Numbered from the stretch's first letter, positions 15,183 through 38,179 are shown. The stretch: 64,000 bases of DNA from IMGVR_UViG_3300026512_000002:124001-188000; one strand, 5' to 3'. Numbers and translations: made by a program. Notes: generated by a model not told the origin, from the sequence alone.

Positions 15183-16094
15183 ATGATTAAAGCAGGGAAT
15201 TATAAGCAAAGATATAATAAAGAAAAACTGCAGTTCATGTCACCGTTAACTATAGGTGCTATTAAAGGTATTTCAAATCCATTTGTGGGTGGTTATGCAT
15301 TTTTCTTATTCATTTATGTACCAGATCAAATTAGAGCATTAACATCAAACCTTATAGGTCCTGATGAAGACAGATTATCAGCAACTGTTGTTAGTCATGC
15401 TGATAGAGATTTTTTCGATTTATGTGAAAAGACAGTTAAAGAAGTTCAAGGTATTCAAGATTGGACACTTGAAGTAACACAATTTAATGGTGGTTTTACT
15501 GGTAAAAACCATGCTATACCTACTGTTATGACTGACAGTACCGAATCCATTTCATTAAAATTTCAAGAATTATCAGGTGGTGTATATGGTACACCTGTTC
15601 AACAATGGGCTACAGCTATCAGTGATCCTAAAACTGGTGTTTCAACATTACTTAAAAGAGACAGTGTTGCTGACTATAGTGTTGAAGCAATTTATATTGT
15701 GACATCACCAAACGTTGCATCACCATCTAGAAAAGGTAGAGCTGAATCTTTAGAAAAAGCATTTTTCTTTGACAGTATGTTTCCTAAAAATGTTCCGCTA
15801 TCACATTATAACTATACTGCTGGTAGTCATGACTTAACAGAATTGACATATGAGTTTAATGCTGAAATGCATGTTGGTGCAGCAATTGATAAAAGAGCCA
15901 TGGAAATTCTATCTAGTGATTTCTTTTATGAAAACTATATTGTTTCTGGTGAAAAATATATTGCTAACAGAGTTAATAATAATAAATCACAATTATTTGA
16001 TGCTGATAATGAAGCTTTCGATGTATGGGGCGATAATGCTCAAGATGGTAGTTTTATTATTCGTGACGATAGTGTTGGTGAATCTATAGAATAG
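15183..16094 (+). CDS. Tail tube protein
   Basis: Directly follows the sheath; ISLKFQE...VQQW...I.DP.TG, YIVTSP, MFPKNV and LTYEF pattern of myovirus tubes. Confidence 0.75.
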   Translation: MIKAGNYKQRYNKEKLQFMSPLTIGAIKGISNPFVGGYAFFLFIYVPDQIRALTSNLIGPDEDRLSATVVSHADRDFFDLCEKTVKEVQGIQDWTLEVTQFNGGFTGKNHAIPTVMTDSTESISLKFQELSGGVYGTPVQQWATAISDPKTGVSTLLKRDSVADYSVEAIYIVTSPNVASPSRKGRAESLEKAFFFDSMFPKNVPLSHYNYTAGSHDLTELTYEFNAEMHVGAAIDKRAMEILSSDFFYENYIVSGEKYIANRVNNNKSQLFDADNEAFDVWGDNAQDGSFIIRDDSVGESIE

Positions 16095-17529
16095 TTCTCA
16101 TAAATAAAAGTAATTCAAACATACCTTCATCTATATTCTTATTAAGTTCAAGATATTCTTTATTATCCATAACACTAGGTGTTATTTTAAACTCATTATA
16201 ATTAGGCAGTACCCAAAATTTATTATTCAAATAATTGGCTAAGTTCAATATAGGGTTTTTACGCTCCATTAATTTAGATTTAATAAAACTGTACTTTGTA
16301 TTAACCAAATCTTGATATATTTTAGTATTATTTAATCGTTCTATAAAAGTTTTTTTCACAATAGAACGTCTAGCTTCTATATCAACATCACTTATTAGAA
16401 CTTTATGTAAATACTTAAATCTTTTATGTTGGGATAATGATTTATATAACATACCTAACATAAGGATATAATCACCTTTATTAATATCATAATTGTATGT
16501 TTTTAAATAATTGCTATAAAATAATGTTACCAGAGTAATTTGGAACTGGGTTATAGTAACATATTTGTCAAGATATCTTAATTCCTCCTTAGTTATAAGC
16601 AAACCACTGTTTTTAAAATTTTTAAAAACTGCTTTTAATTTAGCAACTTTATGAATATCGTTTAATATTAATAAACCTTCATCTTTATGTTTTAGAGCAT
16701 TTTCAACTTTTTCATATGCAGTAACACCATCAGCATCCCTATTATATGATTTGCTAACAGAAAATTGGACATTAAAGTTTTCTCTAAACTTATATTCAAG
16801 TTGTTTTTTAATTGCAGCATGTAATAGTGGTATGGGTGATATTCTAACATCAATCTTGTATAGTATTAGTGTTAAAATTTTTTCATACACTTCTATTAAT
16901 ACAACATTTTGAGTACTATTAGTGTGCTTTAGATACTCCCACATATTAGTGTTGTTACCTTGACTCATCATGATTCTAGAATTGATAAATGCATATAGTT
17001 TAGGTATAATTAAATTATTATTAAACAACTCCATGATATGAACAAACATATTGTAGAAAACAGTGTTGTTTCCAGCAACATCATTGTTAGCAACATAGTC
17101 ACCTATAATAGGTATCGTTAACTTTATAACAAAACTGATTTTATGTAAATCTTGTATTTGTTGATTATTTATATATAGATCTTCATTTATAACATCTGAG
17201 CTTTCGTTATTAAAAGCAACTTCTGGTGATGGGTGATAATGCTCCCTAACATATAAATCGGCTATATCAACTATACCTTCGTTTAATATACGTTCTTTAA
17301 ACAATATTGAAAATTCTTCTTCTGGTAATTCCTTTAAAGTATAAAATTTTTTAAGAGCTATATACTTTTTAATTAAAAATGGATCTTTTTGAAAAGCATA
17401 TCTCATCGATTGCTTTATAAATGGCAACACTTTTATGAATCTTTTTTTCAAAATATCATAATCGTATTTTTCCCGTTCATTAACCTCTAATTGTACAATT
17501 CTATTTTCTGAATTAATTTTAACACCCAT
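16084..17529 (-). CDS. Probable sigma-like promoter-specificity subunit of the non-virion RNAP (AR9 gp226 / phiKZ gp68-like)
   Basis: About 480 aa and alpha-helical. IQDLHKISFVIKLTIPIIGDYV recalls the conserved L..lS...k...Pi.g.y block of this family. It lies three genes downstream of the chaperonin (AR9 gp226 and chaperonin gp228 are neighbours) and shares the TTGACA promoter class with the nvRNAP genes. Confidence 0.55.
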   Translation of the reverse strand: MGVKINSENRIVQLEVNEREKYDYDILKKRFIKVLPFIKQSMRYAFQKDPFLIKKYIALKKFYTLKELPEEEFSILFKERILNEGIVDIADLYVREHYHPSPEVAFNNESSDVINEDLYINNQQIQDLHKISFVIKLTIPIIGDYVANNDVAGNNTVFYNMFVHIMELFNNNLIIPKLYAFINSRIMMSQGNNTNMWEYLKHTNSTQNVVLIEVYEKILTLILYKIDVRISPIPLLHAAIKKQLEYKFRENFNVQFSVSKSYNRDADGVTAYEKVENALKHKDEGLLILNDIHKVAKLKAVFKNFKNSGLLITKEELRYLDKYVTITQFQITLVTLFYSNYLKTYNYDINKGDYILMLGMLYKSLSQHKRFKYLHKVLISDVDIEARRSIVKKTFIERLNNTKIYQDLVNTKYSFIKSKLMERKNPILNLANYLNNKFWVLPNYNEFKITPSVMDNKEYLELNKNIDEGMFELLLFMRTIL

Positions 17530-17542
17530 AATAACCTCCTAA

Positions 17543-18274
17543 TTATTTTCTACGTTTTTTTATTTTTGTAATTTTGACAGTTCGTTTCACCTTTTTTTTA
17601 CTTTTCTTAGTTTTTTTAGACTTATGTTTTTTGACACTTGTAAGTATTTCATCAAAAGTAGCTATTTTGCTTAAAAGTGCACTTTTACTATATTTGATTC
17701 TATATTTTTTAACATCAACACTTTGTTTAACATTTAAAAGATCCATATATCGTAAATATCGTATCGCATAATATATACTTTTTATAAAACCTAGTGAACT
17801 TAGTGGGTTTTTTATTTTTGGCGAATTTTCTTTAGTCTTTTTATTCAATTTACCATATAATTCAGTTGGGATCTTATCATTAACATATAATACATTAGCA
17901 TAAGTGTATATGAAATGAGGATCGTTGCTGAAAAATTTAGCAGGTTCTTTTATAGTACTACCATTATCACTAGGGTTAACATCTATTACTACATCATAGT
18001 GCATTTTATTAAAAGTTTCACTGGGTACTTTAACATGATATAAGTATCTGTTCGATGACTCGTCCCAGAATATTCTAGTGGTAAAATTACGTTCTTTTAG
18101 TAATTTAACAAATTTCATATCCAACATTTCAATCATCATACCCCTATTAGCAACCATTGCACTATATTTACCAGTGGGGTTTGTGATCATCCTATACATA
18201 GATAATTTTTCAGATTGTAATCTGTTGTCTATTTCTAGTTTTTCGTGAAGTATGGGTTTTTTAAAAGATACCAT
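17543..18274 (-). CDS. Conserved jumbo-phage hypothetical protein with a Lys-rich C-terminal tail
   Basis: KVPSE...YDVVID...KFFSNDPHF.YTYA.V block; highly basic tail. Confidence 0.55.
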   Translation of the reverse strand: MVSFKKPILHEKLEIDNRLQSEKLSMYRMITNPTGKYSAMVANRGMMIEMLDMKFVKLLKERNFTTRIFWDESSNRYLYHVKVPSETFNKMHYDVVIDVNPSDNGSTIKEPAKFFSNDPHFIYTYANVLYVNDKIPTELYGKLNKKTKENSPKIKNPLSSLGFIKSIYYAIRYLRYMDLLNVKQSVDVKKYRIKYSKSALLSKIATFDEILTSVKKHKSKKTKKSKKKVKRTVKITKIKKRRK

Positions 18275-18301
18275 ATGAAATCCTATACAATATTAGTGTG
18301 T

Positions 18302-18331
18302 ATTATAACGACTATGTGTATAAAATGTCAA
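18302..18331 (-). promoter_or_regulatory. Consensus sigma70/sigmaA-type promoter
   Basis: Minus strand TTGACA-N18-TATAAT upstream of 18274. Confidence 0.75.
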
Positions 18332-18607
18332 TCTTTTTTTTTAACACATATATTAGGGTAGTTGCAATGTTGTATATGTGTGTGAATTAAGCATATATTT
18401 AATCAACACGATTGTGATTCTAATATCGAAGTTACGATATTTATTAGGAAGGAATACAAGTATTATGTCAATAGTAACAAAAAAAAAGAAAAAGTGGATC
18501 GATTATTAAAGCAACCAACACCACTCATGTTTTCAAAATCATTATAAGATAGTGATTTTAAAGATATGATGTGGTGAAAATTATTCTAGATTTCATCACA
18601 TTTTTTA

Positions 18608-19225
18608 TCAATATGCGGTATCGAAAAATTCGGATATTAACATATCTGAACTTTTCAATGTTGCATAATTGGCATCATCAATACCTTTTCTCATTATATT
18701 GTGATTAATCCCAATTGAATTTACGCTAACGCCTTCTATTAGCATATCTATATATGTTTCTAGTGTCTCAATTTTTTCTTTTATAAATCTATCAATGCCT
18801 TGGTCAACATACATTTTATTAAAATATAATTTATATTTCAAAAAAGTTTCTCTAAAATGATGTGTTAAATTATCTTTAACTGAATCAATACTAACAACTC
18901 TGATTATACTAACACATTTATCTATAACACTCATGATATTCGCATCAATCCTGTGATTTGTTTTCACATGTGCTTTGACGAGATCTAGACCAATAACTAA
19001 TAATCCTAGAAAATTATAAACTATTCGACCATCAGGTGAACCATCATTTGTTAAAATATTGGAATCTTGTCTTTTTTTCATATAATCGTCAACTAATTTA
19101 AAAAATTTATCTCTTTCAGAAGCTAGGTTATATATAGTAGTTTTACCAATCCCTATGGTGGATGCTTCTAGCATATCTTCCACAATTAAAGATAATTTCA
19201 TATTCATAACTGTTGTTTTATCCAT
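18608..19225 (-). CDS. Hypothetical protein
   Basis: ORF with AGGA RBS; AACA-N6-TA at 19246-19257. Confidence 0.6.
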   Translation of the reverse strand: MDKTTVMNMKLSLIVEDMLEASTIGIGKTTIYNLASERDKFFKLVDDYMKKRQDSNILTNDGSPDGRIVYNFLGLLVIGLDLVKAHVKTNHRIDANIMSVIDKCVSIIRVVSIDSVKDNLTHHFRETFLKYKLYFNKMYVDQGIDRFIKEKIETLETYIDMLIEGVSVNSIGINHNIMRKGIDDANYATLKSSDMLISEFFDTAY

Positions 19226-19319
19226 AATTCATCCTATATATTGTTTATATTTTTGTTAACATATGTGTTATGATAGATGTGTTTAAATAATTTGTTTGAT
19301 TTGAATTTTTAATTAATAG

Positions 19320-21101
19320 TTATCTAACAATGCTAGGAGTGTCGATAAGAATTTGTCCTGTTGTTAATAGTAGTCCAATAATACTAAAAGCACTTTCTAA
19401 TATAACCAATTCAGTTAATGTTGGGTTAATAACTGACCAATCTTTATCTTCATATTGCTCCGTCACCATATTATAAACTATATTTTTTTCAATATACATT
19501 TTTTTAATCTCATCGATTCTTGCTAATAACTTATTCTTCACTGGTGCAACACCAATGATATTATCATTCTCAACATGATCGATTGTTATATCATATGCAC
19601 CACTGTTTTCCAACATCATTTTATACGGTGTTGTAAAAGCTACTAACAACCTATTTAGAATATCATTTAATAACTCGTTTCCATCGTTCTTACATTTATC
19701 TATTAAAATAGTCAACGCTTTAATCATACTCAAGTTACCACCAGGAACAATACCTGATTTAACAGCAGCTCTAGTAGCCAATGCTGCATCTTCTACAAGA
19801 TATTCTCTAGCTGTTTTATCTTCAGTTGTGTCACCACCAATATAAATAATAGCAACTTTACCATGTAACTTTTTATAACGTTCTTTTAAATTACCTAAAA
19901 CTTCAGTATAATCAACTTCTTTATCAGTTCTATTAACAATTCTATCTATCTCATCTTGTATTAAATAAAGTCGCTCATCCATTACTTTTTGTTCATAATC
20001 ACCATCGATAAATCTTGCCTGTTTATTAGTTATAACAATTTTTCTACATGTTCCAAATCTATTACTACTCCATGATAGGTTTTTATTATTAGTTATAGAT
20101 CTTAATGGTACTGCATTTAAATAAATTGCTAAATCTTCAAAAATTTCTTTATAGTTAGGTGTCGCTGTTGACATTCTAATTGCAGCTATAGGTAGATTAG
20201 GATTAATGTTTTTATTATGCATCAGAAAATCATTAGTAAAATCATGAGCAAAACCATTAGCTATAAAAATAATAGGTTTTCTTAACCCACCATCTGGTTC
20301 TGTTTGATCATTAATAATATTATATATAAACTTAGTATCCGCACCACTAAAAGTTCCATCATACATAATTATCAATGGTTCATCAAACTCTACGGTTTTT
20401 TTCTTAATATTTGTTATAAAAACAGGGTGTAAATAGCCCATATCTGCAACATAGCCTTCTTTAGACTCATAGTGTGTATCCTTACCTATTGATTTAGTTC
20501 CCATCAATGTAACGCCATTTCCCAATTCTTCATATATTTTACCAATAACATCACCTATTTCAACATCATTGTTTGCTGATATCGTAGCAACATTTTTAAT
20601 ATCGTCAACAGTTACAGTTGGTTTAGATATTTCATTCATAATAGTTTCAGAAATTTCATCTTTTATCTCATTAAGTATTGATAATAACTTGTGGGTCGGT
20701 GTAGTATGTTTTGTTCTCAAATCTTTTAAACTATTATACAATGTGTTGGCAATTATAATTGCAGATGTTGTGCCATCGCCAACTTTAGACATTTGTAAAA
20801 ATGATATTTGTTTAATAGTTTGTAAAACTTTAGCTTCGCCAGGGTTAGCATATTTAATATTGGTTAAGATAGTGTAACCATCTTTAGTAAAATATGTTCC
20901 TTTTAATGGGTCTCCAACCATAGTGTTTAACCCGAATGGTCCTAGTGAACTACCTACACTTGTTGTTATCTCATTAAGAGATTTTTCAATAATGTCTGTT
21001 GATTGTTTATAATCTAAAATATTTGTTGTTAAACCTTCTTCTTTTAGCATATTTTTGTTTCTATCTAAAAAATCTTGACTATATGGTACTGCGTATGTCA
21101 T
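19320..21101 (-). CDS. groEL: GroEL-like phage chaperonin
   Basis: SLGPFG, TKDGYT, VGDGTTSA, ATISANND, EDAALATRAA and VPGG motifs; start MTYAVPY at 21101 with GGAGGT RBS; no GGM tail. Confidence 0.93.
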   Translation of the reverse strand: MTYAVPYSQDFLDRNKNMLKEEGLTTNILDYKQSTDIIEKSLNEITTSVGSSLGPFGLNTMVGDPLKGTYFTKDGYTILTNIKYANPGEAKVLQTIKQISFLQMSKVGDGTTSAIIIANTLYNSLKDLRTKHTTPTHKLLSILNEIKDEISETIMNEISKPTVTVDDIKNVATISANNDVEIGDVIGKIYEELGNGVTLMGTKSIGKDTHYESKEGYVADMGYLHPVFITNIKKKTVEFDEPLIIMYDGTFSGADTKFIYNIINDQTEPDGGLRKPIIFIANGFAHDFTNDFLMHNKNINPNLPIAAIRMSTATPNYKEIFEDLAIYLNAVPLRSITNNKNLSWSSNRFGTCRKIVITNKQARFIDGDYEQKVMDERLYLIQDEIDRIVNRTDKEVDYTEVLGNLKERYKKLHGKVAIIYIGGDTTEDKTAREYLVEDAALATRAAVKSGIVPGGNLSMIKALTILIDKCKNDGNELLNDILNRLLVAFTTPYKMMLENSGAYDITIDHVENDNIIGVAPVKNKLLARIDEIKKMYIEKNIVYNMVTEQYEDKDWSVINPTLTELVILESAFSIIGLLLTTGQILIDTPSIVR

Positions 21102-25636: not shown

Positions 25637-25683
25637 TACAAATCCCTATATATACTTATTATATTGTTTTAAAGGTATTTTTC

Positions 25684-27519
25684 TTATTCGTATAATGATT
25701 CTATCATTGACGGTTTTTTATTCATATAGAAACGAGGATCATCTAATTGTTTTTTCAATTTCTCAAAACTGAAGCCAACAAACTGAGATTTGGTTTTAAT
25801 AGCTTCTGATAATCTTAATATACTATAGTCGTCAACAGTTATGTCTGGACTACTTAAATCTATATCACGATATATGTCACCACTATCCCTAATCATCATA
25901 CTGACTAACAATTCAACATGTGAGCTAACAATATCAATACCGTTCAATTCTATTAATTGTAGCAAATTGTTATAGTATGTCGAAAAATCTCCATCTAATA
26001 AATCGTTTTTACGATCAAATAAATATAACAACATATCTAGTGATTCTGATATTTCTTGATTATGAACTATAAATGTGAAAACAATTTTATTTAAAGTATC
26101 ACCGGTTATCACAATATCTTCATGTTCTATTGTGTCAAATTGGATATTTGCTGTTAATTTGACTGGTAAAACTATTTCCTCTTCAACATCTCCATTATGT
26201 AATGAGATAGTCATTGATACAATTTCCATGTGTTCTCGGCCTCTAGCAACATCTTCATTTGTAATAGTTATTGTGAAATCATTGTTATTTGGTATGATGG
26301 TATTATTATCTATATTGAAGTTATTTTTAATGATATCCGGCCATTCAATTTCATTAACATTAATCTTAGACATATGTTTGGTAGACAATATTGTTTGTGT
26401 AAACGGCTCCGTAGTACTTAAAGTTGAAACTATACCAACATGATAATCTTTTGTAACTTCATACATTTTCTTATTACCAAAACATTTTGAGCATACTTTA
26501 TTTTTTGTTTTGTAAGCACATGTGATAGGTGATCTAACACCAACAGTTGTGCCTATTAAATCGGTATCATCCATAGTAATATGTTTATCGGTACCTATAA
26601 TATTCTTACCAACTATTGTTTTTAAAATGTTCTCATTTTTCACAAAAATGTTTAAAGGCGTTTCACTACCACAATCACCATAAATAATACTCTCAGTATC
26701 CAATGATAATAGCTCAAATTTCCTTGTTAAATAACCAGCCTTACTAGTACCACCGAATATTAATATTGCGGCTTTACGAGCTGTTTCTGATGCTATATAT
26801 AAATCGCTAGCTGATCTCAGTCCACGTATAAGGGAAGTATTAACAGGTGTCGGTATAACACCCCCCATCATATTGGTTTTGAAACCTTCAACTAAAAAGG
26901 TCTCTTGCAACTGTTTAGGTTTGATACCAACACCACTATGGAGAAAATTCTTTAAACAAGTATCTTCGCTGTTTAAAATACTCAACATTCTATCTAACGC
27001 TATTTTAATTTTCTTTTCAGCTGTGTCTACAGGTTCGTTTGGATCTATATGATAGTCTAGTAGTTTTTTAAATTCTTTATTTCTAAAAGATAAATGTATT
27101 ATATCATATATATTTATAGTTGAACCTATATAGGTATTGGCTTTAGCTGCTAAAGTAGTCAATTCTTGTATTGCTTCTGCTATCAGTTTCTTAACAATAT
27201 ATCTATCTATATCTAAATCTAATAATGGTTGAAGTATATTTTGATCAATATGTTTATCCAATTCTTTAACAGTTGTATCTGTCATAATATTTGTATCAGA
27301 TATACTGATATTGAAATATATAAATGGTTTTAATATTATTAAATTCACATAGTATTGTGATTCTGTTAATTCTAATGTAACATTTTCATTTATTTTTACA
27401 GATACGATGTTGTTCCTTGTTTTAAAATCAATCTGTTTTAAAAATGATTTTATAGTTAGCGTGTACTCATCGTACGTGTCAAACATTAATGATTTTTCGA
27501 TTGGTTTACTGGTAGACAT
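25684..27519 (-). CDS. RNA polymerase beta' subunit, C-terminal half (probable non-virion RNAP)
   Basis: Bridge helix ETARKA...SKAGYLTRKF, DCGS, Zn site VRSPITC...VCSKCFG, trigger loop VGIVS...TEPFTQTILSTKH, SHVELLV and FSFEK; start at 27519 with GGAGG RBS. Confidence 0.92.
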   Translation of the reverse strand: MSTSKPIEKSLMFDTYDEYTLTIKSFLKQIDFKTRNNIVSVKINENVTLELTESQYYVNLIILKPFIYFNISISDTNIMTDTTVKELDKHIDQNILQPLLDLDIDRYIVKKLIAEAIQELTTLAAKANTYIGSTINIYDIIHLSFRNKEFKKLLDYHIDPNEPVDTAEKKIKIALDRMLSILNSEDTCLKNFLHSGVGIKPKQLQETFLVEGFKTNMMGGVIPTPVNTSLIRGLRSASDLYIASETARKAAILIFGGTSKAGYLTRKFELLSLDTESIIYGDCGSETPLNIFVKNENILKTIVGKNIIGTDKHITMDDTDLIGTTVGVRSPITCAYKTKNKVCSKCFGNKKMYEVTKDYHVGIVSTLSTTEPFTQTILSTKHMSKINVNEIEWPDIIKNNFNIDNNTIIPNNNDFTITITNEDVARGREHMEIVSMTISLHNGDVEEEIVLPVKLTANIQFDTIEHEDIVITGDTLNKIVFTFIVHNQEISESLDMLLYLFDRKNDLLDGDFSTYYNNLLQLIELNGIDIVSSHVELLVSMMIRDSGDIYRDIDLSSPDITVDDYSILRLSEAIKTKSQFVGFSFEKLKKQLDDPRFYMNKKPSMIESLYE

Positions 27520-27546
27520 GATGACCTCCATGGTTAAATAATAACC

Positions 27547-27576
27547 ATTAAATCATATTGTACTACTAAATGTCAA
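27547..27576 (-). promoter_or_regulatory. sigma70-like promoter upstream of beta'-C
   Basis: Minus strand TTGACA-N18-TTTAAT with TG at the extended -10 position. Confidence 0.5.
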
Positions 27577-27586: not shown

Positions 27587-27964
27587 TTAATTTTTATGTT
27601 GTTTTCTATTTAAAGCAGCTTTTCTAGCTAAAGCAATACCTTGTGATCTATACTTTTCTCTTAATTCATTTCTAAGGGCAATATACTTTCTTCTAAATAT
27701 AATCATTTTCTTATACTTTATATCACCAGACGCTTTTGCTGCTAATAAAGCTGATCTTAAATTAGAAATTTGTAATTGAGTATTTTTATCAAACCTAACG
27801 ATATTGACTTCATTAATAATATCTTCATATGATACTTCATTGAATATGTTAGGATTTGTTGCTAAAATATCATCAACGATATTTTCCAAGTGAACTATAG
27901 AACCAGTATCAGTAACATTACTATACATTTCTTCTATACTTTTAATAAATTTTTCTTTTTCCAT
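27587..27964 (-). CDS. Small late protein with a basic C-terminal helix (probable virion protein)
   Basis: AACA-N6-TA at 27989-28000; acidic N-half with xxE sites and an Arg/Lys-rich C-half. Confidence 0.55.
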   Translation of the reverse strand: MEKEKFIKSIEEMYSNVTDTGSIVHLENIVDDILATNPNIFNEVSYEDIINEVNIVRFDKNTQLQISNLRSALLAAKASGDIKYKKMIIFRRKYIALRNELREKYRSQGIALARKAALNRKQHKN

Positions 27965-28050
27965 TGTTAACCTCATAAATACATTTATTAATGTAGTGTT
28001 TATCTAGCAATAACCAATGAGGACAATAATATAAATAATGTGGAGATATC

Positions 28051-28761
28051 ATGTACAATAAGACCAAACTCATAACAACACTAGATAATATTTTGTATTT
28101 AACAAATTGGAAACACTACATTTCTTTAATAGATTCTGGATTAACTGACCCAAATTTATTAAAGAAGAGTTTTAAAGATTTCTTAAACACTGATAATGGG
28201 GTGTTAGCCAATTTATATGATTTGAACGAATTAGGTTTAACTCATATGGAATTTATGTCTGTTATGGGAGATGACAACTTTTATAATGACATCGATATGT
28301 TTGCATACAACACTATTGATTTCATAAATCATATAAATGGTAAAGGTGTAAGTGAAGTGATTATTGTAGAATCAATACCGGTGAAATCTATTCGTGACAA
28401 TATTGTTGAGATATTTTCAAACATGATAACAGGTACTGTTAAATTTAGATTTTTCAATACCATTGAACGTAAATTAGATTATATCAAAGCAAATATAAGT
28501 ACTGGTGATATAGTTATGCTTTCAGAACCAATAATCATAGACAGTGTTATAGAAGATATATATGATATAAAACATAGTTTGTTTATACCTATATGGGGTT
28601 GGACTAATAAATATTTAGATACAGTTACCACTAATTCTAATGATACAGATGTTGTTATTCAGATGATTCACGGATATTCATATATAACAGCTGATGCTCC
28701 AAAAACTATAGATGAATATGTGGATGATATAATGGGTGAAAAACCATCAACTATAATATAA
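28051..28761 (+). CDS. Hypothetical protein
   Basis: GGAG RBS; GACA-N6-TA variant at 28022-28033; likely co-transcribed with beta'-N. Confidence 0.6.
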   Translation: MYNKTKLITTLDNILYLTNWKHYISLIDSGLTDPNLLKKSFKDFLNTDNGVLANLYDLNELGLTHMEFMSVMGDDNFYNDIDMFAYNTIDFINHINGKGVSEVIIVESIPVKSIRDNIVEIFSNMITGTVKFRFFNTIERKLDYIKANISTGDIVMLSEPIIIDSVIEDIYDIKHSLFIPIWGWTNKYLDTVTTNSNDTDVVIQMIHGYSYITADAPKTIDEYVDDIMGEKPSTII

Positions 28762-28780
28762 CTATAATAATGGAGTTTAT

Positions 28781-30382
28781 ATGATAATAGATATTAATGA
28801 AATTACGAAAATTGTTGATTACAATAACATTAAAGAAGTATATGATCCCATATACTTAAATATGGATATGATGCCTACAGCAGGTGGTGTGTTTTCATAT
28901 GAAATATTTGGTAAATCACCATATGATCGTAAAAATACTTTCGCATATATAAATTTAGGTAAAAAATATATGCAACCAGTGATATATACTATGTTAAAAG
29001 TTATGAAACGTAATATTGTAAAATGTTTAGATTCTACAGGTAAGTTTAATATAATTGATGGTGAAATGGTTAAAGATCCTAATGGTATTAGTGGTGTTGA
29101 TTTTGTATATAAAAATTGGAATAAGTTAAGATTCGAATATGGTGAAAATCCGAGTCCTGTTAAAAAAACTAAAGTTGACCTAATAAATAAAATGACACGA
29201 GATGAAATATTTACAGATAAGTGGTTGGTGATACCACCCTTCTATAGAGATTTAAACATGTCTGATGTTGCTAGTGGTAAATTATTCATAGATGATTTAA
29301 ATAAATATTACATAAAATTAATAAACCTAACACGTAATAATATCAACAACGCTACTATGGATTTGGATTTTGTATCTAATAAAGTTGATGCGTTAATCAA
29401 TGCACAATTACTTATAATATACCAATATTTTCAAGGTAAATTGGCGAAAAAGAAGGGTATTATAAAAGATAAACTTCTTAAAAAGGTTATTGATTATTCT
29501 AGTAGAGGTATTTTATCAGTAGCATCTAAGACTCATAACAAGCCAACGGATGTACCTGTCACATATGATACTACAGGATTACCATTACCACATGTAATAT
29601 CATTATATTTTCCCATATTAGTTTCATTAATACATGATGTTATACACGCTTATATCAAATCACATGTACATAAAATGTATGTTCTTAATTCTAAAAATGA
29701 ACTAGTGTCAAGAGATATATCAAATGATGAAATAATAAACATCGAAAACAATTACACTCACGATAAAATAGAATTGGTTCTTAAAAAACTTATTAGGGAT
29801 CATGATTTTAGGTTGAGCTATATAGAATTTAAGTATAATAAAAAAGATGTAGCATATCTAGCATATGATTTTAAAAACGACATTCTACCGGAGGAATCCC
29901 TAGTGAATGTTCAAGGAAAACCAATTAGACTTACATGGTTAGAATTATTATCAAAAGTTGCTCACGCTAACCTACTTCCTGGTAAAATGATAGTGTTGAC
30001 CAGATATCCTATGGAACATTTTCACAACATCCTATTTAGTAGAGTTAGAATGTTAACTGTTGATAATATAACTAATTTTGCAGGTTGTTTAACATTTCCA
30101 ATATTGGTGCGTGAAAAAGATGGTACAATAAATAAACACAATGTACAACATATGGATACTATACAAGTTGCATCTGCTTACTTAAAGGATATTGGTGGGG
30201 ACTTTGATGGTGACTCAGTTAGCGTAAGATCATTATATTCTAAAGAAGCTAATATCGAAGCTGAACAATTAATGAAAAAGAAAATAGGTATGCTCAATGT
30301 TGATGGTTCTGGTGCTAGACATGTTATAAACGAAGGTGTTCTAGGACTATATCTTTTAACTAAACGACAACCTAAAAAATAA
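28781..30382 (+). CDS. RNA polymerase beta' subunit, N-terminal/catalytic part (probable virion RNAP)
   Basis: GVFSYEIFG, LVIPPFYRD, DLNKYY, KKGII...LLKKVIDYSSRGIL, VLTRYP, catalytic GGDFDGD, EA..EA..LM and VLGLYLLT. Confidence 0.95.
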   Translation: MIIDINEITKIVDYNNIKEVYDPIYLNMDMMPTAGGVFSYEIFGKSPYDRKNTFAYINLGKKYMQPVIYTMLKVMKRNIVKCLDSTGKFNIIDGEMVKDPNGISGVDFVYKNWNKLRFEYGENPSPVKKTKVDLINKMTRDEIFTDKWLVIPPFYRDLNMSDVASGKLFIDDLNKYYIKLINLTRNNINNATMDLDFVSNKVDALINAQLLIIYQYFQGKLAKKKGIIKDKLLKKVIDYSSRGILSVASKTHNKPTDVPVTYDTTGLPLPHVISLYFPILVSLIHDVIHAYIKSHVHKMYVLNSKNELVSRDISNDEIINIENNYTHDKIELVLKKLIRDHDFRLSYIEFKYNKKDVAYLAYDFKNDILPEESLVNVQGKPIRLTWLELLSKVAHANLLPGKMIVLTRYPMEHFHNILFSRVRMLTVDNITNFAGCLTFPILVREKDGTINKHNVQHMDTIQVASAYLKDIGGDFDGDSVSVRSLYSKEANIEAEQLMKKKIGMLNVDGSGARHVINEGVLGLYLLTKRQPKK

Positions 30383-30494: not shown

Positions 30495-30530
30495 TTTACA
30501 AACCATATTATAAATATTATAATATGGTTT
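30495..30530 (+). promoter_or_regulatory. sigma70-like promoter overlapped by a 14-bp perfect inverted repeat
   Basis: TTTACA-N17-TATAAT (30495-30523); AAACCATATTATAA-ata-TTATAATATGGTTT (30500-30530). Confidence 0.6.
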
Positions 30531-30547
30531 TTTAAAGGAGGGTTAAT

Positions 30548-33205
30548 ATGCGTATTAGGAAATTAGTATTAGAAAACTTTATCGGCTTATCCAAACTAGA
30601 TAACAATAGATTTGAACTCAATTTTTATGAAAAAGGTGAGACTAGTAATAGATTGATTTTATTTAAAGGCGATAATGGTTCTGGTAAAACAACAGCTATG
30701 TCCCATGCTCAACCTTTTCCACATTCTAATGATGGTAGAGGTAATCCTATAATTGAGGGTGAAGATGGGTATAAGCAAGTTATTATTGATAATGATGAAA
30801 ATGAATATGATTGTAGAATATATTATAAAAAAGGTAAAAGAGGTACAACAAAATGTTATGTGTCTAAAAATGGTATTGAATTAAACGAACCAGGGCATGT
30901 AAAATCTTACTATAGTATATTGGAACAAGAACTTGGTCTAACTAAAGATTATTTTAAATTAGGAGCAATTGGTTCAACAGTAGATAATTTCATAACATTA
31001 TCTAAAGCTGAGCGCAAAACATATATTAGTAAATTGTTACCTGATATAAGTAAATATATGAAAGCTTTTACTATAGTTAGTAGTAGATATAAAGTACTGA
31101 AATCTAAAATAGATATGTATACGAATATGTTGAACGATATACCCGATAATGATACTATACTTGAACATATTGATACTATCGAAGGTTCAATAAAAACATA
31201 TAGTGAAAATAGGGATAGTATTGTAACTAAATTAAGTAAACTTAATGATAGTTATAAATCGGTTGATTCTAAGTTAAATGATATCAAGCTTAATAAACCT
31301 GAAGTTTTAAAAGTGCCTAAAGATATAGATATGAGAATGGGAATATTAAACGAAGATTTGGATAATTTGAATGATATAATAGGAGATATTAATAGGGAAA
31401 CATGTGTCGCAAATATAGATAGTGTGACAAAAAATGGTAAAATTATTAAAAAACAATTAGAATTATTAAATATTCAACTAATAGATTATAATGATAAAAT
31501 GGACTCTACTAAAGCCAAAATATCTGAATTAAATGGAGAAGATAGCGATATAGATCAAAGGATAGTAGAAATTGAAAAAGAAATATCTAGTATAAAATCT
31601 GATATAGATTATGACTCTGAATTAACCCAGTCATTGTTACAATATACTGATAATTTGAATGAATTAATTAATGTTTTCAAATATATTAAGAAAATATTGA
31701 AATTTAAAAATAATAACTTATCACATGGTTTGGGTATATATGATGATAAAACAGTGGATAAACATATTAAGAATATTGAAGATTCTATCAATGAGGTAGT
31801 TAAAACTATTGAAAAAAGAAATAAACGATATAGTGAAATAGATAGCAACTTTGGCAATATTGAATTATTGGATAGTAGACCAACTGATTGTGTTATAGAT
31901 ACATGTCCTTTCATCAAAAATGCTATACATGTTATTGATAAATATGACCTTAAAAATGGTAAAACTGAACTTGAAGAAATTAAAGAAAAATTGATAGATG
32001 ATAAAAATAGTCTTGATGAATTAAACAAAGAGTTATTGTCTTTAAAAACAATTAAATTTAATATAAATAACTTTAATCAATTAATTGAAGACTTAAGTAA
32101 CTCTGATAGCGATATAGTATCATTTGTACTTAATATACTTAATATTGAAAAAGAAAATATTATTAAAATAAGTTCGTTAGATATTAACAACATTACTGTG
32201 TTTATTGATGATGTTTTAGCTAAGACTAATTATATTAAAACATATGTGAAATTATCCAATAAATTAGATTCACTGATAATCATTAAAAACAAAAATTCTG
32301 ATAATACTGAGCTATTGAACCATTTAAACACTACTCTAGTGGAATATAAAACACAACATAAGAACATCAAAACTAGTATAAATAGTTACAATCTTAATAT
32401 TAATGAATTAAGAAGCGAATTGATTAAATATAAAAATGTTTTAAGTAATCTGGATAAACGCGATGAGTTGATAATTAGTAAAGATAAGTATATTGATATT
32501 AAAGAAACTTTTGATTTATATAAATTACTTAAAGATGAGTATAACTCAATTAAGAACGATATATATACTTTTGAAACTGAATTGAATAATATAAATAATA
32601 AATTACATTCATTAAATTCTAAGTTAACCAAGTATAAAATAATGCTTGATAAAAAAAATAGTTATACAGATACTAAAAATGAACTTGAGAAAAATTATAC
32701 AAAAATTAAAATAGTTAAAGATTCTCTTGATATTAAGAAAGGAATACCTCTTGTATATACTCGTTCATATTTAGAATCTATTAGAGTTAATATTAATAAG
32801 TTATTGGATATAGTTTATGATGGTATGGTTATTGATTTCAATGTTACAGAAAAAGAATTTGATATAGTTTTGCGTAATGCTGAATTAAATAGATCGTTTG
32901 ACATATTATCTGATGGTGAAAAAGCGATTATTAAATTAACTGTATCTATGGGTATGTTAGCTGAAATAATAAAGAAAAATAAGTATAAAATAATGTACTT
33001 AGATGAGGTTGATGCTACACTTGATAGTGGTAAACGAAGAATATTTTTAGACATTCTAAACGCTCAATGTGATCTATTGGGAATAGATCAAGTTTTTATC
33101 ATATCTCATAATGATGCTCTTGACAATATAAACAGTGATATTGTATTATTAAGTAATAGACCAGATGAGTATGTTATTAATGGTAAAATACTTTATTCTG
33201 TTTAA
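30548..33205 (+). CDS. SbcC/Rad50-like SMC ATPase (recombination nuclease subunit)
   Basis: GDNGSGKTT, long coiled coils, central hook-like CVIDTCPF, signature LSDGEK, Walker B YLDEVD and IISHN. Confidence 0.93.
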   Translation: MRIRKLVLENFIGLSKLDNNRFELNFYEKGETSNRLILFKGDNGSGKTTAMSHAQPFPHSNDGRGNPIIEGEDGYKQVIIDNDENEYDCRIYYKKGKRGTTKCYVSKNGIELNEPGHVKSYYSILEQELGLTKDYFKLGAIGSTVDNFITLSKAERKTYISKLLPDISKYMKAFTIVSSRYKVLKSKIDMYTNMLNDIPDNDTILEHIDTIEGSIKTYSENRDSIVTKLSKLNDSYKSVDSKLNDIKLNKPEVLKVPKDIDMRMGILNEDLDNLNDIIGDINRETCVANIDSVTKNGKIIKKQLELLNIQLIDYNDKMDSTKAKISELNGEDSDIDQRIVEIEKEISSIKSDIDYDSELTQSLLQYTDNLNELINVFKYIKKILKFKNNNLSHGLGIYDDKTVDKHIKNIEDSINEVVKTIEKRNKRYSEIDSNFGNIELLDSRPTDCVIDTCPFIKNAIHVIDKYDLKNGKTELEEIKEKLIDDKNSLDELNKELLSLKTIKFNINNFNQLIEDLSNSDSDIVSFVLNILNIEKENIIKISSLDINNITVFIDDVLAKTNYIKTYVKLSNKLDSLIIIKNKNSDNTELLNHLNTTLVEYKTQHKNIKTSINSYNLNINELRSELIKYKNVLSNLDKRDELIISKDKYIDIKETFDLYKLLKDEYNSIKNDIYTFETELNNINNKLHSLNSKLTKYKIMLDKKNSYTDTKNELEKNYTKIKIVKDSLDIKKGIPLVYTRSYLESIRVNINKLLDIVYDGMVIDFNVTEKEFDIVLRNAELNRSFDILSDGEKAIIKLTVSMGMLAEIIKKNKYKIMYLDEVDATLDSGKRRIFLDILNAQCDLLGIDQVFIISHNDALDNINSDIVLLSNRPDEYVINGKILYSV

Positions 33206-33215
33206 GTTCAATTAC

Positions 33216-33246: not shown

Positions 33247-33260
33247 ATAGGAATTAAATT

Positions 33261-33671: not shown

Positions 33672-33682
33672 TAGGAGGGTTG

Positions 33683-35353: not shown

Positions 35354-35368
35354 CCATAAGGAGTCGTA

Positions 35369-35926: not shown

Positions 35927-35938
35927 CTAGTTAACTAT

Positions 35939-35969
35939 AACAGGGTAAACTCTACCCTGTTTTTTTTTT
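35939..35969 (+). terminator. Rho-independent terminator
   Basis: AACAGGGTA-aactc-TACCCTGTT followed by poly-T. Confidence 0.85.
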
Positions 35970-36013
35970 CTTGTTTATTAATATTAGATATGTTAATATA
36001 GGGTATATTTTAT

Positions 36014-36508: not shown

Positions 36509-36565
36509 GTTTTAATAAAATCCACATAATAAACTATATACAACTATTATAAAATTAAAAATACA

Positions 36566-36595
36566 TTGACATGTTTCTATATGATATGTTAACAT
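36566..36595 (+). promoter_or_regulatory. sigma70-like promoter upstream of RNAP beta-N
   Basis: TTGACA-N18-TAACAT with TG extension. Confidence 0.55.
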
Positions 36596-36622
36596 TTCAT
36601 CATATTATTTATGAGGGTTATT

Positions 36623-38179
36623 ATGAAACATGTTAACAACATTTACAAACTTATTCAAGACGATGTGTCTAAACGAGAACCGTTTAATAACGATTTTTTA
36701 AAATTAAAAGCTAACGATAACTTATTACAATATATTGACGTTATAGCTGGTACTCTTGAAAAAATTGATGGTATAACATATTTGGGTTCAGAGATACGTC
36801 CTGAAAAAGAAGTTATTGAGAGCAGGAAGTTTAAAAATATAGAAGAATCTAGATTGATATTGATAAATCTTAAATTCAGAATCAGAGGTGTTATAGATCA
36901 GAATAAAGAATATAAAGAAGAAGAATATACTTTACCATTATTTTTCTTTAAATTGATTAATGATAATTATTTTATATACAACGGTGTTAAGTATGTTCCT
37001 ATATATCAAATAGTTGACAAATTCTATAAATTAAACAATGTCTTAGTTCTTAAAACTTTAATGATGGGTGTTTTTTTACGTGGTAATAAAACATCTATAG
37101 AATCAATGACAGGGGCAATATACAATGGTCGTGAATATAAAATACATCTGTTTAAAAAGAAAATACCAACATTGCTTTATTACTTAGCTAAATTTGGAAT
37201 GGCTAAAACATTAGAGTTTTTTGATTTAACAACCGATGATATTAAAATATTACATAGTAAAAATAATGCTGCAGAATACAATGAAGCTTTAATAAATCAA
37301 AATATAGATGTGTTTGAATTGCAAAAAAATACATATTTGTTAGTTAAAAAAGACAGTATAACAGATCAACTTAAAACCGATGTGGTTATATCTCTACACA
37401 CTCTTTTTTCTAAAATGCCTAAATTTAGATATAGTTCTCTTAAATCACCTGACTATTATTTTAAGAAATTCACTAACTCGTTTACAACTAATCCAAATAA
37501 TACTAAAAAAGGTGAAAAAGTTCTAATTTCTTTTGAAAAAATATTTGATGAACAAACAAAATTTGTGTTAAACATAGACGATAAAGACAAAGAAGATGTT
37601 TATCATATTGTAAAATGGATGATGAAAAATTTTAATAAATTGATGAAACAAGACAATATGGATTTAGGTAATAAGAGATTGCGTTTCTATGAATATATGC
37701 TTATACCACTTATAGTTAAATTTAACAGTTCTAACAATAGATTGTTTAATGATAAAGGTACTGTGACATTTAGTCAACTTCAAACTATATTTAAAAGAAT
37801 TAGTCCTAGTTTTTTATTGAAATCAATTATATCTAGTAATAGTTCAACCATATCAGAATTAATACGTTATGATAACACATCGTTCAACAACATTGATCTG
37901 TTTAGTATGCTTAAAGCGTCTATTAAAGGCCCACAATCTATAGCTAGTAAAGGTGCTAGTGGTAGAACGGAAATACCACTAAGATATAGAAACATACATC
38001 CAAGTTACCTAGGTAGAGTTTCTATAACATATGCTCCTAGTAACGATCCAGGTTTAAATTTCATATTAACACCTTTTGTAGAAGTTGATGATAGAATGTA
38101 TTTTAAAAAATTAAGACCTGAATTACAAGAAGAAGTTGATAAACTGTCATCAAATGTAGGTGAAATAATAAATGTATAA
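36623..38179 (+). CDS. RNA polymerase beta subunit, N-terminal part (probable non-virion RNAP)
   Basis: YFIYNGVKYVPIYQ (cf. FIING.ERV...Q), NKRLR, GPQS, and RNIHPSYLGRV....PSNDPGL (cf. RDVHPSHYGR.CP.ETPEG.N.GL). Confidence 0.88.
   Translation: MKHVNNIYKLIQDDVSKREPFNNDFLKLKANDNLLQYIDVIAGTLEKIDGITYLGSEIRPEKEVIESRKFKNIEESRLILINLKFRIRGVIDQNKEYKEEEYTLPLFFFKLINDNYFIYNGVKYVPIYQIVDKFYKLNNVLVLKTLMMGVFLRGNKTSIESMTGAIYNGREYKIHLFKKKIPTLLYYLAKFGMAKTLEFFDLTTDDIKILHSKNNAAEYNEALINQNIDVFELQKNTYLLVKKDSITDQLKTDVVISLHTLFSKMPKFRYSSLKSPDYYFKKFTNSFTTNPNNTKKGEKVLISFEKIFDEQTKFVLNIDDKDKEDVYHIVKWMMKNFNKLMKQDNMDLGNKRLRFYEYMLIPLIVKFNSSNNRLFNDKGTVTFSQLQTIFKRISPSFLLKSIISSNSSTISELIRYDNTSFNNIDLFSMLKASIKGPQSIASKGASGRTEIPLRYRNIHPSYLGRVSITYAPSNDPGLNFILTPFVEVDDRMYFKKLRPELQEEVDKLSSNVGEIINV

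What the first reader, a model, noticed from the sequence alone, without database searches (positions are those of the whole stretch)
16084..38179. Putative non-virion RNAP genes carry host sigma70-type promoters, while putative virion RNAP pieces carry late promoters
Seen: TTGACA-N18-[TATAAT / TAACAT / TTTAAT] precedes the 18274-17529 operon (sigma-like subunit), beta-N (36566) and beta'-C (27576), and TTTACA-N17-TATAAT precedes SbcC. In contrast, the short beta'-C piece (11282) and the operon with the DFDGD beta'-N (28051/28781) have AACA/GACA-N6-TA. Inference: promoter class sorts the scattered subunits into two enzymes. It also suggests nvRNAP genes are started by host RNAP, whereas phiKZ and AR9 development is reported to be largely independent of host RNAP. 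This could be a hybrid transcription programme.
Basis: partly seen in the sequence, partly recalled or inferred. Interest (0 to 1): 0.65.

Follow-up and report, generated by a model that had tools for sequence, protein, structure and literature searches.

The report
Host-type promoters before phage RNA-polymerase genes
In this uncultured AR9-like giant phage, all five genes for its second (non-virion) RNA polymerase carry a bacterial-style TTGACA/TATAAT promoter instead of the phage's own early promoter, so the host polymerase may be needed to start the late programme of a phage group thought to be independent of it.

Summary
The sites exist as described. Loose sigma70 matches are at chance level in this 28% GC DNA (201 found, 181±13 in shuffles). 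Exact TTGACA is different: 8 of the 16 copies within 150 nt upstream of genes lie 54-63 nt before a start codon (p≈2e-7). Five of those eight head the five non-virion RNAP (nvRNAP) transcription units, assigned by homology to AR9 g270, g089, g226, g154 and g105 (Fisher p≈1.5e-7). Two of these units lie outside the window. The sites have an N17/18 spacer, a TAnnnT -10 and often a TGn extended -10.

The genome also holds about 20 intergenic copies of AR9's virion-RNAP early consensus AAATATATATTAT, none before an nvRNAP gene. It also holds AR9's late motif AACA-N6-TA, sharply peaked 30-39 nt before start codons, including before the three virion-RNAP genes found.

In AR9 the orthologous nvRNAP genes sit behind early promoters. 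Only the two closest metagenomic relatives share a sigma70-like promoter before beta-N; about 50 more distant relatives do not.

Gene 11282 is a virion protein (AR9 g125-like), not an RNAP piece. The SbcC "promoter" is a one-mismatch match inside a terminator-like hairpin.

Host-RNAP reading is the best inference but is untested.

The parts
18302..18331 (-). Sigma70/sigmaA-type promoter TTGACA-N18-TATAAT (12/12 match). It lies 57 nt before the ATG of the g227-like/gp226-like operon.
   Evidence: positional class
17543..18274 (-). Homologue of AR9 g227 (hypothetical protein), first gene of the operon.
   Evidence: tblastn E 2e-27; phrog_20045
16084..17529 (-). nvRNAP fifth, promoter-specificity subunit (AR9 gp226 homologue). 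It starts 13 nt after the g227-like gene. AR9 V206 aligns with Asn195.
   Evidence: phrog_25005; PDB 7S01_A E 2e-14; BLASTP
27547..27576 (-). Sigma70-type promoter TTGACA-N18-(TGa)TTTAAT, 57 nt before the ATG at 27519. AR9 has an early promoter at the orthologous g153/g154 junction.
   Evidence: AR9 annotation
25684..27519 (-). nvRNAP beta' C-terminal subunit (AR9 g154 homologue). The longest ORF starts at 27531; the start at 27519 has a GGAGG ribosome-binding site.
36566..36595 (+). Sigma70-type promoter TTGACA-N18-(TGt)TAACAT, 57 nt before the ATG at 36623.
36623..38179 (+). nvRNAP beta N-terminal subunit (AR9 g105 homologue, 38% identity).
28022..28033 (+). Variant late promoter GACAATAATATA (G instead of A at -11), 29 nt before the ATG at 28051. 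It scores 9.5 bits on the late PWM.
28051..28761 (+). 236-aa ORF of unknown function, first gene of the operon that holds the vRNAP beta'N gene.
   Evidence: no Pfam or PHROG hit
28781..30382 (+). Virion RNAP beta' N-terminal subunit (AR9 g145 homologue), with DFDGD at residue 474.
30495..30535 (+). TTTACA-N17-TATAAT (11/12 match) overlapping a perfect 14-bp AU-rich hairpin (30500-30530) with a T-run. It looks like a terminator for the 28051-30382 operon. Promoter function is doubtful.
30548..33205 (+). SbcC-like ATPase (AR9 g139 homologue).
11255..11266 (+). Late (nvRNAP-type) promoter AACAATTAATTA, 27 nt before the ATG at 11282.
11282..12013 (+). Virion protein (AR9 g125 homologue), just upstream of the tail sheath gene as in AR9. 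It is not an RNAP subunit.
   Evidence: phrog_2926; tblastn E 1e-40; no PDB hit
27989..28000 (-). Late promoter AACACTACATTA for 27587-27964 (AR9 g153 virion-protein homologue).
25657..25668 (-). Late promoter AACAATATAATA for the 806-aa ORF 23216-25636.
19246..19257 (-). Late promoter AACAAAAATATA for 18608-19225.

Best explanation
The window belongs to a 228-kb, 28% GC, AR9/PBS1-like jumbo phage from a hydrothermal-vent metagenome. The phage uses three promoter classes.

(i) AR9's virion-RNAP early consensus AAATATATATTAT sits before DNA polymerase and many small genes.

(ii) A bacterial sigma70/sigmaA-type promoter has this form: A-tract, TTGACA, N17/18, often TGn, then TAnnnT, about 25-27 nt before the ATG. 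It sits before all five non-virion RNAP transcription units and before a few 'cellular-type' replication genes (RNR, SSB and a C39-like peptidase; more loosely HU).

(iii) AR9's late motif AACA-N6-TA(A) sits before structural genes and before the virion-RNAP subunit genes.

The most likely mechanism is that class (ii) is read by the host's primary-sigma RNA polymerase holoenzyme. Host RNAP would then make the nvRNAP. The nvRNAP with its gp226-like subunit would read the late promoters. Those late transcripts include the genes for the virion RNAP packaged for the next round.

Shown: the three motif classes, their positions, their segregation by gene set, and the replacement of AR9's early promoter at orthologous junctions.

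Inferred: which enzyme reads class (ii), and when.
For: - All five nvRNAP units carry exact TTGACA 55-57 nt before the ATG. Only three other genes share that geometry. Fisher test 5/5 against 3/132, p=1.5e-7. Positional enrichment p=2e-7.
- The spacer is 17-18 nt and the -10 is TAnnnT in 9 of 10 sites. G at -14 occurs in 9 of 13 sites including relatives, p=1.5e-5. A-runs lie directly upstream of the -35.
- The phage's own early consensus is abundant elsewhere: 8 exact 13-mers against about 0.8 expected, and about 21 intergenic sites with up to one mismatch. It lies before the g152-like DNA polymerase but is absent within 150 nt upstream of any nvRNAP unit.
- Two nvRNAP genes (beta'N, beta-C) follow divergent neighbours, so their promoter must lie in the gap that holds the TTGACA site.
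- In AR9 the orthologous genes are served by annotated early promoters.
- An AR9 control shows no positional peak for TTGACA.
- Relative L008 (46% identity) has TTGACA-N17-TATCAT before beta-N, HU and one other gene, alongside an AR9-type early motif and late motifs. Relative L007 (55% identity) has TTGTTT-N17-TGaTATAAT before beta-N.
- No sigma70-family gene was found in the phage.
- ThyX and dUTPase are present here and absent from AR9. This suggests ordinary thymine DNA, a normal template for host RNAP.
Against: - There are no transcript, TSS, host or enzyme data, and no RNA runs.
- Generic sigma70-like matches are at chance level in this AT-rich DNA, so the case rests on one exact hexamer plus geometry.
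- Six of the eight core sites use N18, while N17 is the usual sigmaA optimum.
- Several -10 hexamers are weak (TTTAAT, TAACAT, TATTCT).
- The established paradigm for AR9 and phiKZ is that the injected vRNAP transcribes the nvRNAP genes (PMC5312081, PMC7598289).
- Conservation could be tested for only one subunit (beta-N), in two relatives.
- The contig is about 89% complete, and the large vRNAP beta piece was not found.
Confidence: 0.55

Rival explanations
1. The TTGACA class is a phage-specific 'middle' or second early class. It would be read by a phage enzyme: the virion RNAP with a second specificity or an unknown factor, or a phage RNAP core borrowing a sigma. Its resemblance to sigma70 promoters would be convergent.
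For: The -35-like hexamer is invariant while the -10 is loose, and N18 predominates. That is atypical for a set of ordinary host promoters. In AR9 the same genes are vRNAP-dependent early genes (PMC5312081). The factor that gives vRNAP its promoter specificity is unknown (PMC5312081).
Against: AR9 vRNAP is reported to be very sensitive to deviations from AAATATATATTAT (PMC5312081), and that consensus is kept unchanged in this genome at other genes. The TTGACA sites share no such core. The TGn extended -10 and the 17/18 spacing are hallmarks of sigma70-family recognition. No sigma-like gene was found other than the gp226 homologue.
Confidence: 0.25
2. TTGACA is the binding site of a regulatory protein that times or couples expression of the nvRNAP regulon. 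It would be an operator or activator site rather than a -35 element, and the true promoter would be something not yet recognised.
For: One exact, non-degenerate hexamer lies at a fixed distance in a functionally coherent regulon.
Against: The site is not palindromic or repeated. It always comes with a TAnnnT hexamer at 17/18 nt, usually with G at -14. No alternative promoter motif was found in these gaps.
Confidence: 0.1
3. The sites are chance matches in AT-rich DNA with no function.
For: Loose sigma70 matches and total TTGACA counts are at expectation. A full scan of all hexamers can throw up p≈2e-7 by repeats, as with CTTCAA in AR9.
Against: The hexamer was specified in advance. The positional peak is p=2e-7, or about 3e-5 after correcting for window choice. 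The association with all five nvRNAP units is independent of that, at p=1.5e-7. The flanks of the sites are unrelated. The promoter is conserved before beta-N and HU in L008.
Confidence: 0.05

Closest known systems
Bacillus phage AR9 / PBS1 (Takahashivirus) two-RNAP transcription programme (PMC5312081, PMC7598289, PMC9209446)
   Same: - It has the same split subunits: homologues of g270, g154, g105, g089 and g226 for nvRNAP, and of g145, g264 and g078 for vRNAP.
- Local synteny is kept: GroEL-g227-g226, g153-g154, g145-SbcC and g125-tail sheath.
- The early consensus AAATATATATTAT and the late consensus AACA-N6-TA are the same.
- The vRNAP genes are in the late class.
   Different: - Protein identity is only about 24-38%.
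- The nvRNAP genes carry TTGACA-N17/18-TAnnnT instead of the early consensus found at orthologous AR9 positions.
- The phage encodes ThyX and dUTPase, so it probably has thymine rather than uracil DNA.
- The U-specificity valine of gp226 (V206) aligns with Asn.
- The late logo has an extra conserved A at +2.
Bacterial sigma70/sigmaA housekeeping promoters, as used by early genes of host-RNAP-dependent phages
   Same: -35 TTGACA, a 17-18 nt spacer, a TAnnnT -10, a TGn extended -10, an upstream A-tract, and a short leader to a GGAGG ribosome-binding site.
   Different: Here they sit in a phage that also carries an injected RNAP with its own promoters. N18 predominates. Recognition by any holoenzyme is untested and the host is unknown.
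Ralstonia jumbo phages RSL2/RSF1 (phiKZ-related, rifampicin-sensitive; PMC5468394)
   Same: They encode full vRNAP and nvRNAP sets, yet show dependence on host RNAP.
   Different: They belong to a different, phiKZ-related clade. Their dependence was shown physiologically without a promoter-level explanation. Here there is a promoter-level prediction without physiology.
Coliphage N4 three-polymerase programme (as summarised in PMC5312081)
   Same: It uses an injected virion RNAP, a second phage RNAP and host sigma70 RNAP in one infection cycle.
   Different: N4's RNAPs are single-subunit-type enzymes, and host RNAP reads its late genes. Here host RNAP would make the second polymerase.

Membership tests
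sigma70/sigmaA-dependent promoter | -35 hexamer TTGACA | tested here: met
   The hexamer is exact at all five nvRNAP units and three other genes at the same geometry.
sigma70/sigmaA-dependent promoter | Spacer of 17±1 nt to a -10 hexamer with A at position 2 and T at position 6 | tested here: met
   The spacer is N18 (6 sites) or N17 (the RNR site is ambiguous). The -10 is TAnnnT in all but TTTAAT at 27552-27547.
sigma70/sigmaA-dependent promoter | Extended -10 TGn (common in Gram-positive hosts) | tested here: met
   G at -14 occurs in 5 of 9 own sites and 9 of 13 with relatives, p=1.5e-5. T at -15 occurs in 8 of 13. Caveat: the spacer was chosen to optimise the -10.
sigma70/sigmaA-dependent promoter | Initiation by host primary-sigma holoenzyme about 7 nt downstream of the -10 | not testable with these tools
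   No host is known and no RNA data exist.
AR9-type virion-RNAP early promoter (AAATATATATTAT-N6-G) | 13-nt AT-rich consensus upstream of the gene | tested here: not met
   No match with up to one core mismatch lies within 150 nt upstream of any nvRNAP unit. About 21 intergenic matches lie elsewhere in the genome.
AR9-type late promoter (AACA-N6-TA/G) read by nvRNAP+gp226 | AACA, exactly 6 nt, then T[AG], at a fixed short distance before late genes | tested here: met
   There is a peak of 29 sites 30-39 nt before ATG, with no peak at N5 or N7. The motif lies before homologues of the portal, prohead protease and virion proteins, and before the operons of two vRNAP genes.
AR9-type late promoter (AACA-N6-TA/G) read by nvRNAP+gp226 | A at -11 (template U/T), at the 28022 site before the vRNAP beta'N operon | tested here: inconclusive
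   The site reads GACA. The class as a whole is not enriched. The site scores 9.5 bits at the canonical distance. In AR9, position -11 is strictly required (PMC7598289).
AR9-type late promoter (AACA-N6-TA/G) read by nvRNAP+gp226 | Deoxyuridine in the template strand, with the conserved gp226 Val206 | tested here: not met
   ThyX and dUTPase are present and absent from AR9. V206 aligns with Asn195. The base composition of the virion DNA itself cannot be tested here.
AR9/phiKZ-type jumbo phage with two multisubunit RNAPs | Five nvRNAP subunit genes | tested here: met
   Homologues of g270, g154, g105, g089 and g226 were found with E values from 1e-16 to 1e-115. Also Pfam and PHROG hits and PDB 7S01.
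AR9/phiKZ-type jumbo phage with two multisubunit RNAPs | Four vRNAP subunit genes | tested here: inconclusive
   Homologues of g145, g264 and g078 were found. No g189-like large beta piece was found. The contig is about 89% complete and ends in repeats.
Intrinsic (rho-independent) terminator, at 30500-30535 | Stable stem-loop followed by a T-run, downstream of a gene | tested here: inconclusive
   The 14-bp perfect stem has dG -12.6 and z -4.1, followed by T-rich sequence. It has only 2 G-C pairs, so the consensus scan did not call it.

The most novel reading that the evidence does not exclude
A lineage of AR9-like jumbo phages has rewired the early-to-late switch. The injected virion RNAP still reads the conserved AAATATATATTAT promoters, but production of the whole non-virion RNAP (all five subunits) has been handed to the host sigmaA holoenzyme. 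These phages would then be obligately host-RNAP-dependent (rifampicin-sensitive) despite encoding two polymerases. The same lineage has returned to thymine DNA while keeping the AACA-N6-TA late promoter, so its gp226 homologue (Asn in place of the U-selecting Val206) reads T where AR9 strictly needs U.
Probability: 0.4. Interest if true: 0.72.

Novelty: new variant of a known kind. Interest (0 to 1): 0.6.

Why it matters
AR9- and phiKZ-type phages are the textbook case of phage transcription that is fully independent of the host polymerase. The injected enzyme is thought to bootstrap synthesis of the second one. Whether host RNAP contributes at all has stayed open: AR9 yield drops in rifampicin, and RSL2 and RSF1 are rifampicin-sensitive.

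This genome gives a concrete, testable promoter-level prediction. One defined regulon, made up of every nvRNAP subunit plus RNR and SSB, carries host-type promoters at positions where AR9 has vRNAP promoters. If confirmed, it would show that the two-polymerase cascade is evolutionarily plastic. It would also explain host-RNAP dependence in some jumbo phages. And it would provide a natural thymine-reading version of the template-strand promoter recognition solved for AR9 gp226.

Tried and rejected
- Megablast of 22 kb against the phage collection found no match.
- The search for related loci with the single beta-N protein in IMG/VR found nothing.
- The profile search in IMG/VR gave 40 loci at up to 38% identity. 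None has TTGACA-N16-19-TAnnnT within 450 nt upstream of beta-N, and about 12 have the ATATATTAT early core.
- The JGI metagenome scan gave 11 relatives at 30-43% identity. Most have early-like motifs and none has a sigma70 pair.
- Word searches for beta'C and beta-C found no relative closer than 34%. Conservation could therefore be tested only for beta-N.
- The sequencing-run search found one DNA run, which is probably the source sample, and no RNA. Read laying was not used because contig-level DNA cannot show transcript starts.
- Searches for Sigma70_r2 and ThyA in the genome found nothing.
- The AR9 g189-like vRNAP beta piece was not found by Pfam PF00562, tblastx or PHROG scans of large window ORFs.
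- Rfam and tRNA scans of the window found nothing.
- I considered whether the TTGACA sites hide a degenerate AR9-type early core. Only the beta-C site contains ATATATTAT, with 3 mismatches to the 13-mer; the others do not.
- I rejected SbcC as a secure class member. One-mismatch -35 variants have no positional signal, and the site is a hairpin.
- The large representative protein search, structure prediction and complex prediction were not needed and were not run.


Full report
**What the window is.** The window is bases 124001-188000 of a 227,696-bp linear virus contig. The contig has about 28% GC, is rated 89% complete, and comes from a hydrothermal-vent metagenome. It has no near relative in the phage collection. 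Its proteins match AR9/PBS1-like jumbo phages at about 24-38% identity, and blocks of synteny are conserved: GroEL-g227-g226, g153-g154, g145-SbcC and g125-tail sheath.

**Subunit assignment, made independently of promoters.** I ran tblastn of all ORFs against the AR9 record. Its annotation labels each piece as virion or non-virion. Each hit was unambiguous, with no cross-hit to the paralogue at E≤1e-5.

Non-virion RNAP (nvRNAP):

| Position | AR9 homologue | E value |
|---|---|---|
| window 16084-17529(-) | g226 promoter-specificity subunit (also PDB 7S01_A, E 2e-14) | 1.5e-16 |
| window 25684-27519(-) | g154, beta'C | 9e-66 |
| window 36623-38179(+) | g105, beta-N | 8e-95 |
| genome 96930-98258(+) | g270, beta'N (carries DYDGD) | 2e-53 |
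| genome 117705-119681(+) | g089, beta-C | 9e-115 |

Virion RNAP (vRNAP):

| Position | AR9 homologue | Note |
|---|---|---|
| window 28781-30382(+) | g145 | beta'N, with DFDGD at residue 474 |
| genome 52273-53487(-) | g264 | |
| genome 113934-114662(+) | g078 | |

The large vRNAP beta piece (g189-like) was not found. The contig ends in tandem repeats and is incomplete.

**Checking the observation.** Every quoted string is present at the stated place. A generic sigma70 scan carries no signal in this AT-rich DNA. It finds 201 matches in 20 kb against 181.5±13.5 in shuffles, many of them inside genes. TTGACA occurs 147 times genome-wide against 149 expected. Versions with one mismatch show no positional preference.

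What is not chance is where exact TTGACA lies. Sixteen copies sit within 150 nt upstream of start codons, and eight of them are 54-63 nt from the ATG. About 0.6 would be expected (Poisson p=2e-7, or about 3e-5 allowing for the choice of window). In an unbiased scan of all hexamers, TTGACA is the second most position-constrained one, after the late-promoter core AACAAT. A control run on AR9 shows no such peak.

Five of the eight sites head the five nvRNAP transcription units, at distances of 55, 55, 57, 57 and 57 nt. That is 5 of 5 nvRNAP units against 3 of 132 other transcription-unit heads (Fisher p=1.5e-7). The other three sites head these genes:
- a ribonucleotide reductase large subunit that contains an intein;
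- a bacterial-type SSB;
- a C39-like peptidase.

HU and a 59-aa ORF carry TTGACA a little further upstream, at 76 and 69 nt.

**Anatomy of the class.** I aligned the sites on the -35 and on the -10.
- The spacer is 18 nt at six sites. It is 17 nt at the peptidase, HU and 59-aa sites, and the RNR site is ambiguous.
- The -10 hexamers are TATAAT, TTTAAT, TAACAT, TATTCT, TATGAT, TATAGT and TATATT.
- G at -14 occurs in 5 of 9 own sites and in 9 of 13 when the relatives are included (p=1.5e-5 against about 15% G). It is usually preceded by T, which makes a TGn extended -10.
- Several sites have an A-run immediately upstream of the -35.
- The -10 lies 25-27 nt before the ATG. This predicts leaders of about 20 nt that contain a GGAGG-type ribosome-binding site.

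These are the canonical elements of primary-sigma promoters. This is established knowledge of sigma70/sigmaA recognition; it was not tested enzymatically here.

**The two other promoter classes.**

*Early class.* k-mer enrichment in intergenic DNA recovered AAATATATATTA(T). This is exactly the AR9 early (vRNAP) consensus AAATATATATTAT-N6-G (PMC5312081).
- There are 8 exact 13-mers against about 0.8 expected.
- About 21 of the 45 sites with up to one mismatch are intergenic, although intergenic DNA is only 9% of the genome.
- One of them lies 40 nt before the g152-like DNA polymerase, a gene that also has an early promoter in AR9.
- None lies within 150 nt upstream of an nvRNAP unit.

*Late class.* AR9's late motif AACA-N6-T[AG] peaks sharply 30-39 nt before start codons. 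There are 29 sites against a background of about 4, and there is no peak with N5 or N7. The logo is AACA-W-T-n-n-W-W-T-A-A. It precedes the following:
- homologues of the portal, prohead protease and virion proteins;
- window genes 11282, 27964, 25636 and 19225, among others;
- the genes just upstream of the g264-like and g078-like vRNAP pieces.

The vRNAP beta'N operon (28051-30382) has GACAATAATATA at the canonical distance. GACA is not enriched as a class, and AR9 strictly needs position -11. The site still scores 9.5 bits on the late PWM, a level reached at only about 40 positions per strand genome-wide. I treat it as a probable weak late promoter.

So promoter class and homology agree. 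The nvRNAP genes belong to the TTGACA class, and the vRNAP genes belong to the late class.

**Comparison with relatives.** In AR9 the orthologous nvRNAP genes are served by annotated early promoters. These lie directly before g154 and g226, and before the g104-g105 and g087-g089 operons. At the conserved g153/g154 junction, and in the g227/g226 region, the promoter type has therefore been exchanged. Two nvRNAP genes here (beta'N, beta-C) follow divergently oriented neighbours. Their promoter must therefore lie in the 184-220-nt gap that holds the TTGACA site.

| Relative | Identity of beta-N | What lies upstream of beta-N |
|---|---|---|
| L007 (ENA contig) | 55% | terminator, then TTGTTT-N17-TGaTATAAT |
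| L008 (Logan contig) | 46% | TTGACA-N17-TATCAT |
| 40 IMG/VR loci | ≤38% | no TTGACA pair; about a dozen have the ATATATTAT early core |
| 11 JGI metagenome loci | 30-43% | no TTGACA pair; most have early-like motifs |

L008 also carries the same promoter type before HU and one other gene. It has an exact AAATATATATTAT and AACAAT-type late motifs too, so all three classes are present in it. The sigma70-type promoter before beta-N is therefore a derived trait of a small lineage. Closer relatives for the other subunits were not found.

**Who reads the TTGACA class?** The most economical answer is the host primary-sigma holoenzyme.
- All recognisable sigma70 elements are present.
- The phage's own early consensus is intact elsewhere but missing at these genes.
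- AR9 vRNAP is reported to tolerate little deviation from its consensus (PMC5312081).
- No sigma70-family gene is encoded by the phage.

The phage encodes ThyX and dUTPase. AR9, which has uracil DNA, has neither. No homologue of AR9's Ugi or dCMP deaminase was found. The DNA is therefore probably ordinary thymine DNA, a normal template for host RNAP.

Against this:
- nothing has been measured;
- N18 predominates, and some -10 hexamers are weak;
- the host is unknown;
- the AR9/phiKZ paradigm is that vRNAP makes the nvRNAP mRNAs.

A phage-specific "middle" specificity, or a regulator site, cannot be excluded. I put host-RNAP reading at about 0.55. The existence of a distinct, functional promoter class dedicated largely to the nvRNAP regulon I put at about 0.9.

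Precedents for host-RNAP involvement exist only as physiology. RSL2 and RSF1 are rifampicin-sensitive (PMC5468394), and AR9 yield falls about 10-fold in rifampicin, an effect attributed to host damage (PMC5312081, PMC7598289). A full-text search found no paper linking TTGACA-type promoters to nvRNAP genes.

**The SbcC site.** TTTACA-N17-TATAAT (30495-30523) has the right geometry, 53 nt before the ATG. Its -35 is imperfect, however, and 11/12 matches occur about seven times in 20 kb. Its TATAAT is the 3' arm of a perfect 14-bp hairpin (30500-30530) followed by Ts, with dG -12.6 kcal/mol and z=-4.1. It looks primarily like a terminator for the vRNAP beta'N operon. A dual role is possible but unsupported.

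**Side observation on late-promoter chemistry.** AR9 gp226 Val206 excludes the methyl group of thymine at -10 and is invariant in dU phages, and a V206G mutant accepts T (PMC9209446). In the gp226 homologue here, that position aligns with Asn195. The neighbouring W, Y, L and K of helix 2.1bis are conserved. Together with ThyX and dUTPase, this suggests a natural thymine-reading version of the AACA promoter system.

**Verdict.** Two details were wrong: 11282 is not an RNAP piece, and SbcC is not a secure member. Sorting the subunits by promoter class is supported by homology. The hybrid host/phage programme is the best reading but remains an inference. This is a new variant of the known AR9-type system.

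Noticed in passing
genome 190138-190656 (ThyX) and 8136-8519 (dUTPase), outside the window; window 16084-17529: The phage encodes ThyX and dUTPase, and AR9 has neither. The residue aligned with AR9 gp226 Val206 (the uracil-specificity residue) is Asn195. This suggests thymine DNA read by an AR9-type AACA-N6-TA late system.
   Followed up: partly
window 30500-30535: A perfect 14-bp AU-rich hairpin with a T-run (dG -12.6, z -4.1) lies between the vRNAP beta'N gene and SbcC. It overlaps the sigma70-like match on both strands.
   Followed up: yes
genome-wide; window examples 11255-11266, 25657-25668, 51902-51913: The late-promoter logo here is AACA-W-T-n-n-W-W-T-A-A, with an additional conserved A at +2 (36 of 40 sites) that is not part of the published AR9 consensus.
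   Followed up: partly
whole contig; ends at genome 1 and 227696: No homologue of the large vRNAP beta piece (AR9 g189) was found. The 3' end of the contig runs into tandem repeats and the contig is rated 89% complete, so the gene may lie in missing sequence.
   Followed up: partly
genome 4035-7037 (outside the window): The ribonucleotide reductase large subunit is interrupted by an intein (with an HNH-like segment). It is one of the few non-RNAP genes with a TTGACA promoter.
   Followed up: no
genome 91651-91700 (outside the window): The SSB gene has an AR9-type early motif (AAGTATATATTAT) immediately overlapping a TTGACA-N18-TATAGT promoter. It may be a dual-class ('continuous') gene.
   Followed up: no
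window 18275-18607: This unusually long 330-nt gap upstream of the g227/g226 promoter contains a second TTGACA (18471-18466, minus strand) with a poor -10. It has no Rfam match, and its function is unknown.
   Followed up: partly
window 23216-25636 (-): This 806-aa ORF has no Pfam, PHROG or AR9 match. It is preceded by a consensus late promoter and is probably a lineage-specific virion or late protein.
   Followed up: no
L008:1-14433: This Logan contig (beta-N 46% identical, 33% GC) shows all three promoter classes. Its sigma70-type sites share the -10 context GATATCAT/GATATCCT with N17.
   Followed up: partly
window 19320-21101 (-): A phage GroEL-like chaperonin (PF00118, phrog_5725) is syntenic with AR9 g228, upstream of the gp226 operon.
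   Followed up: no
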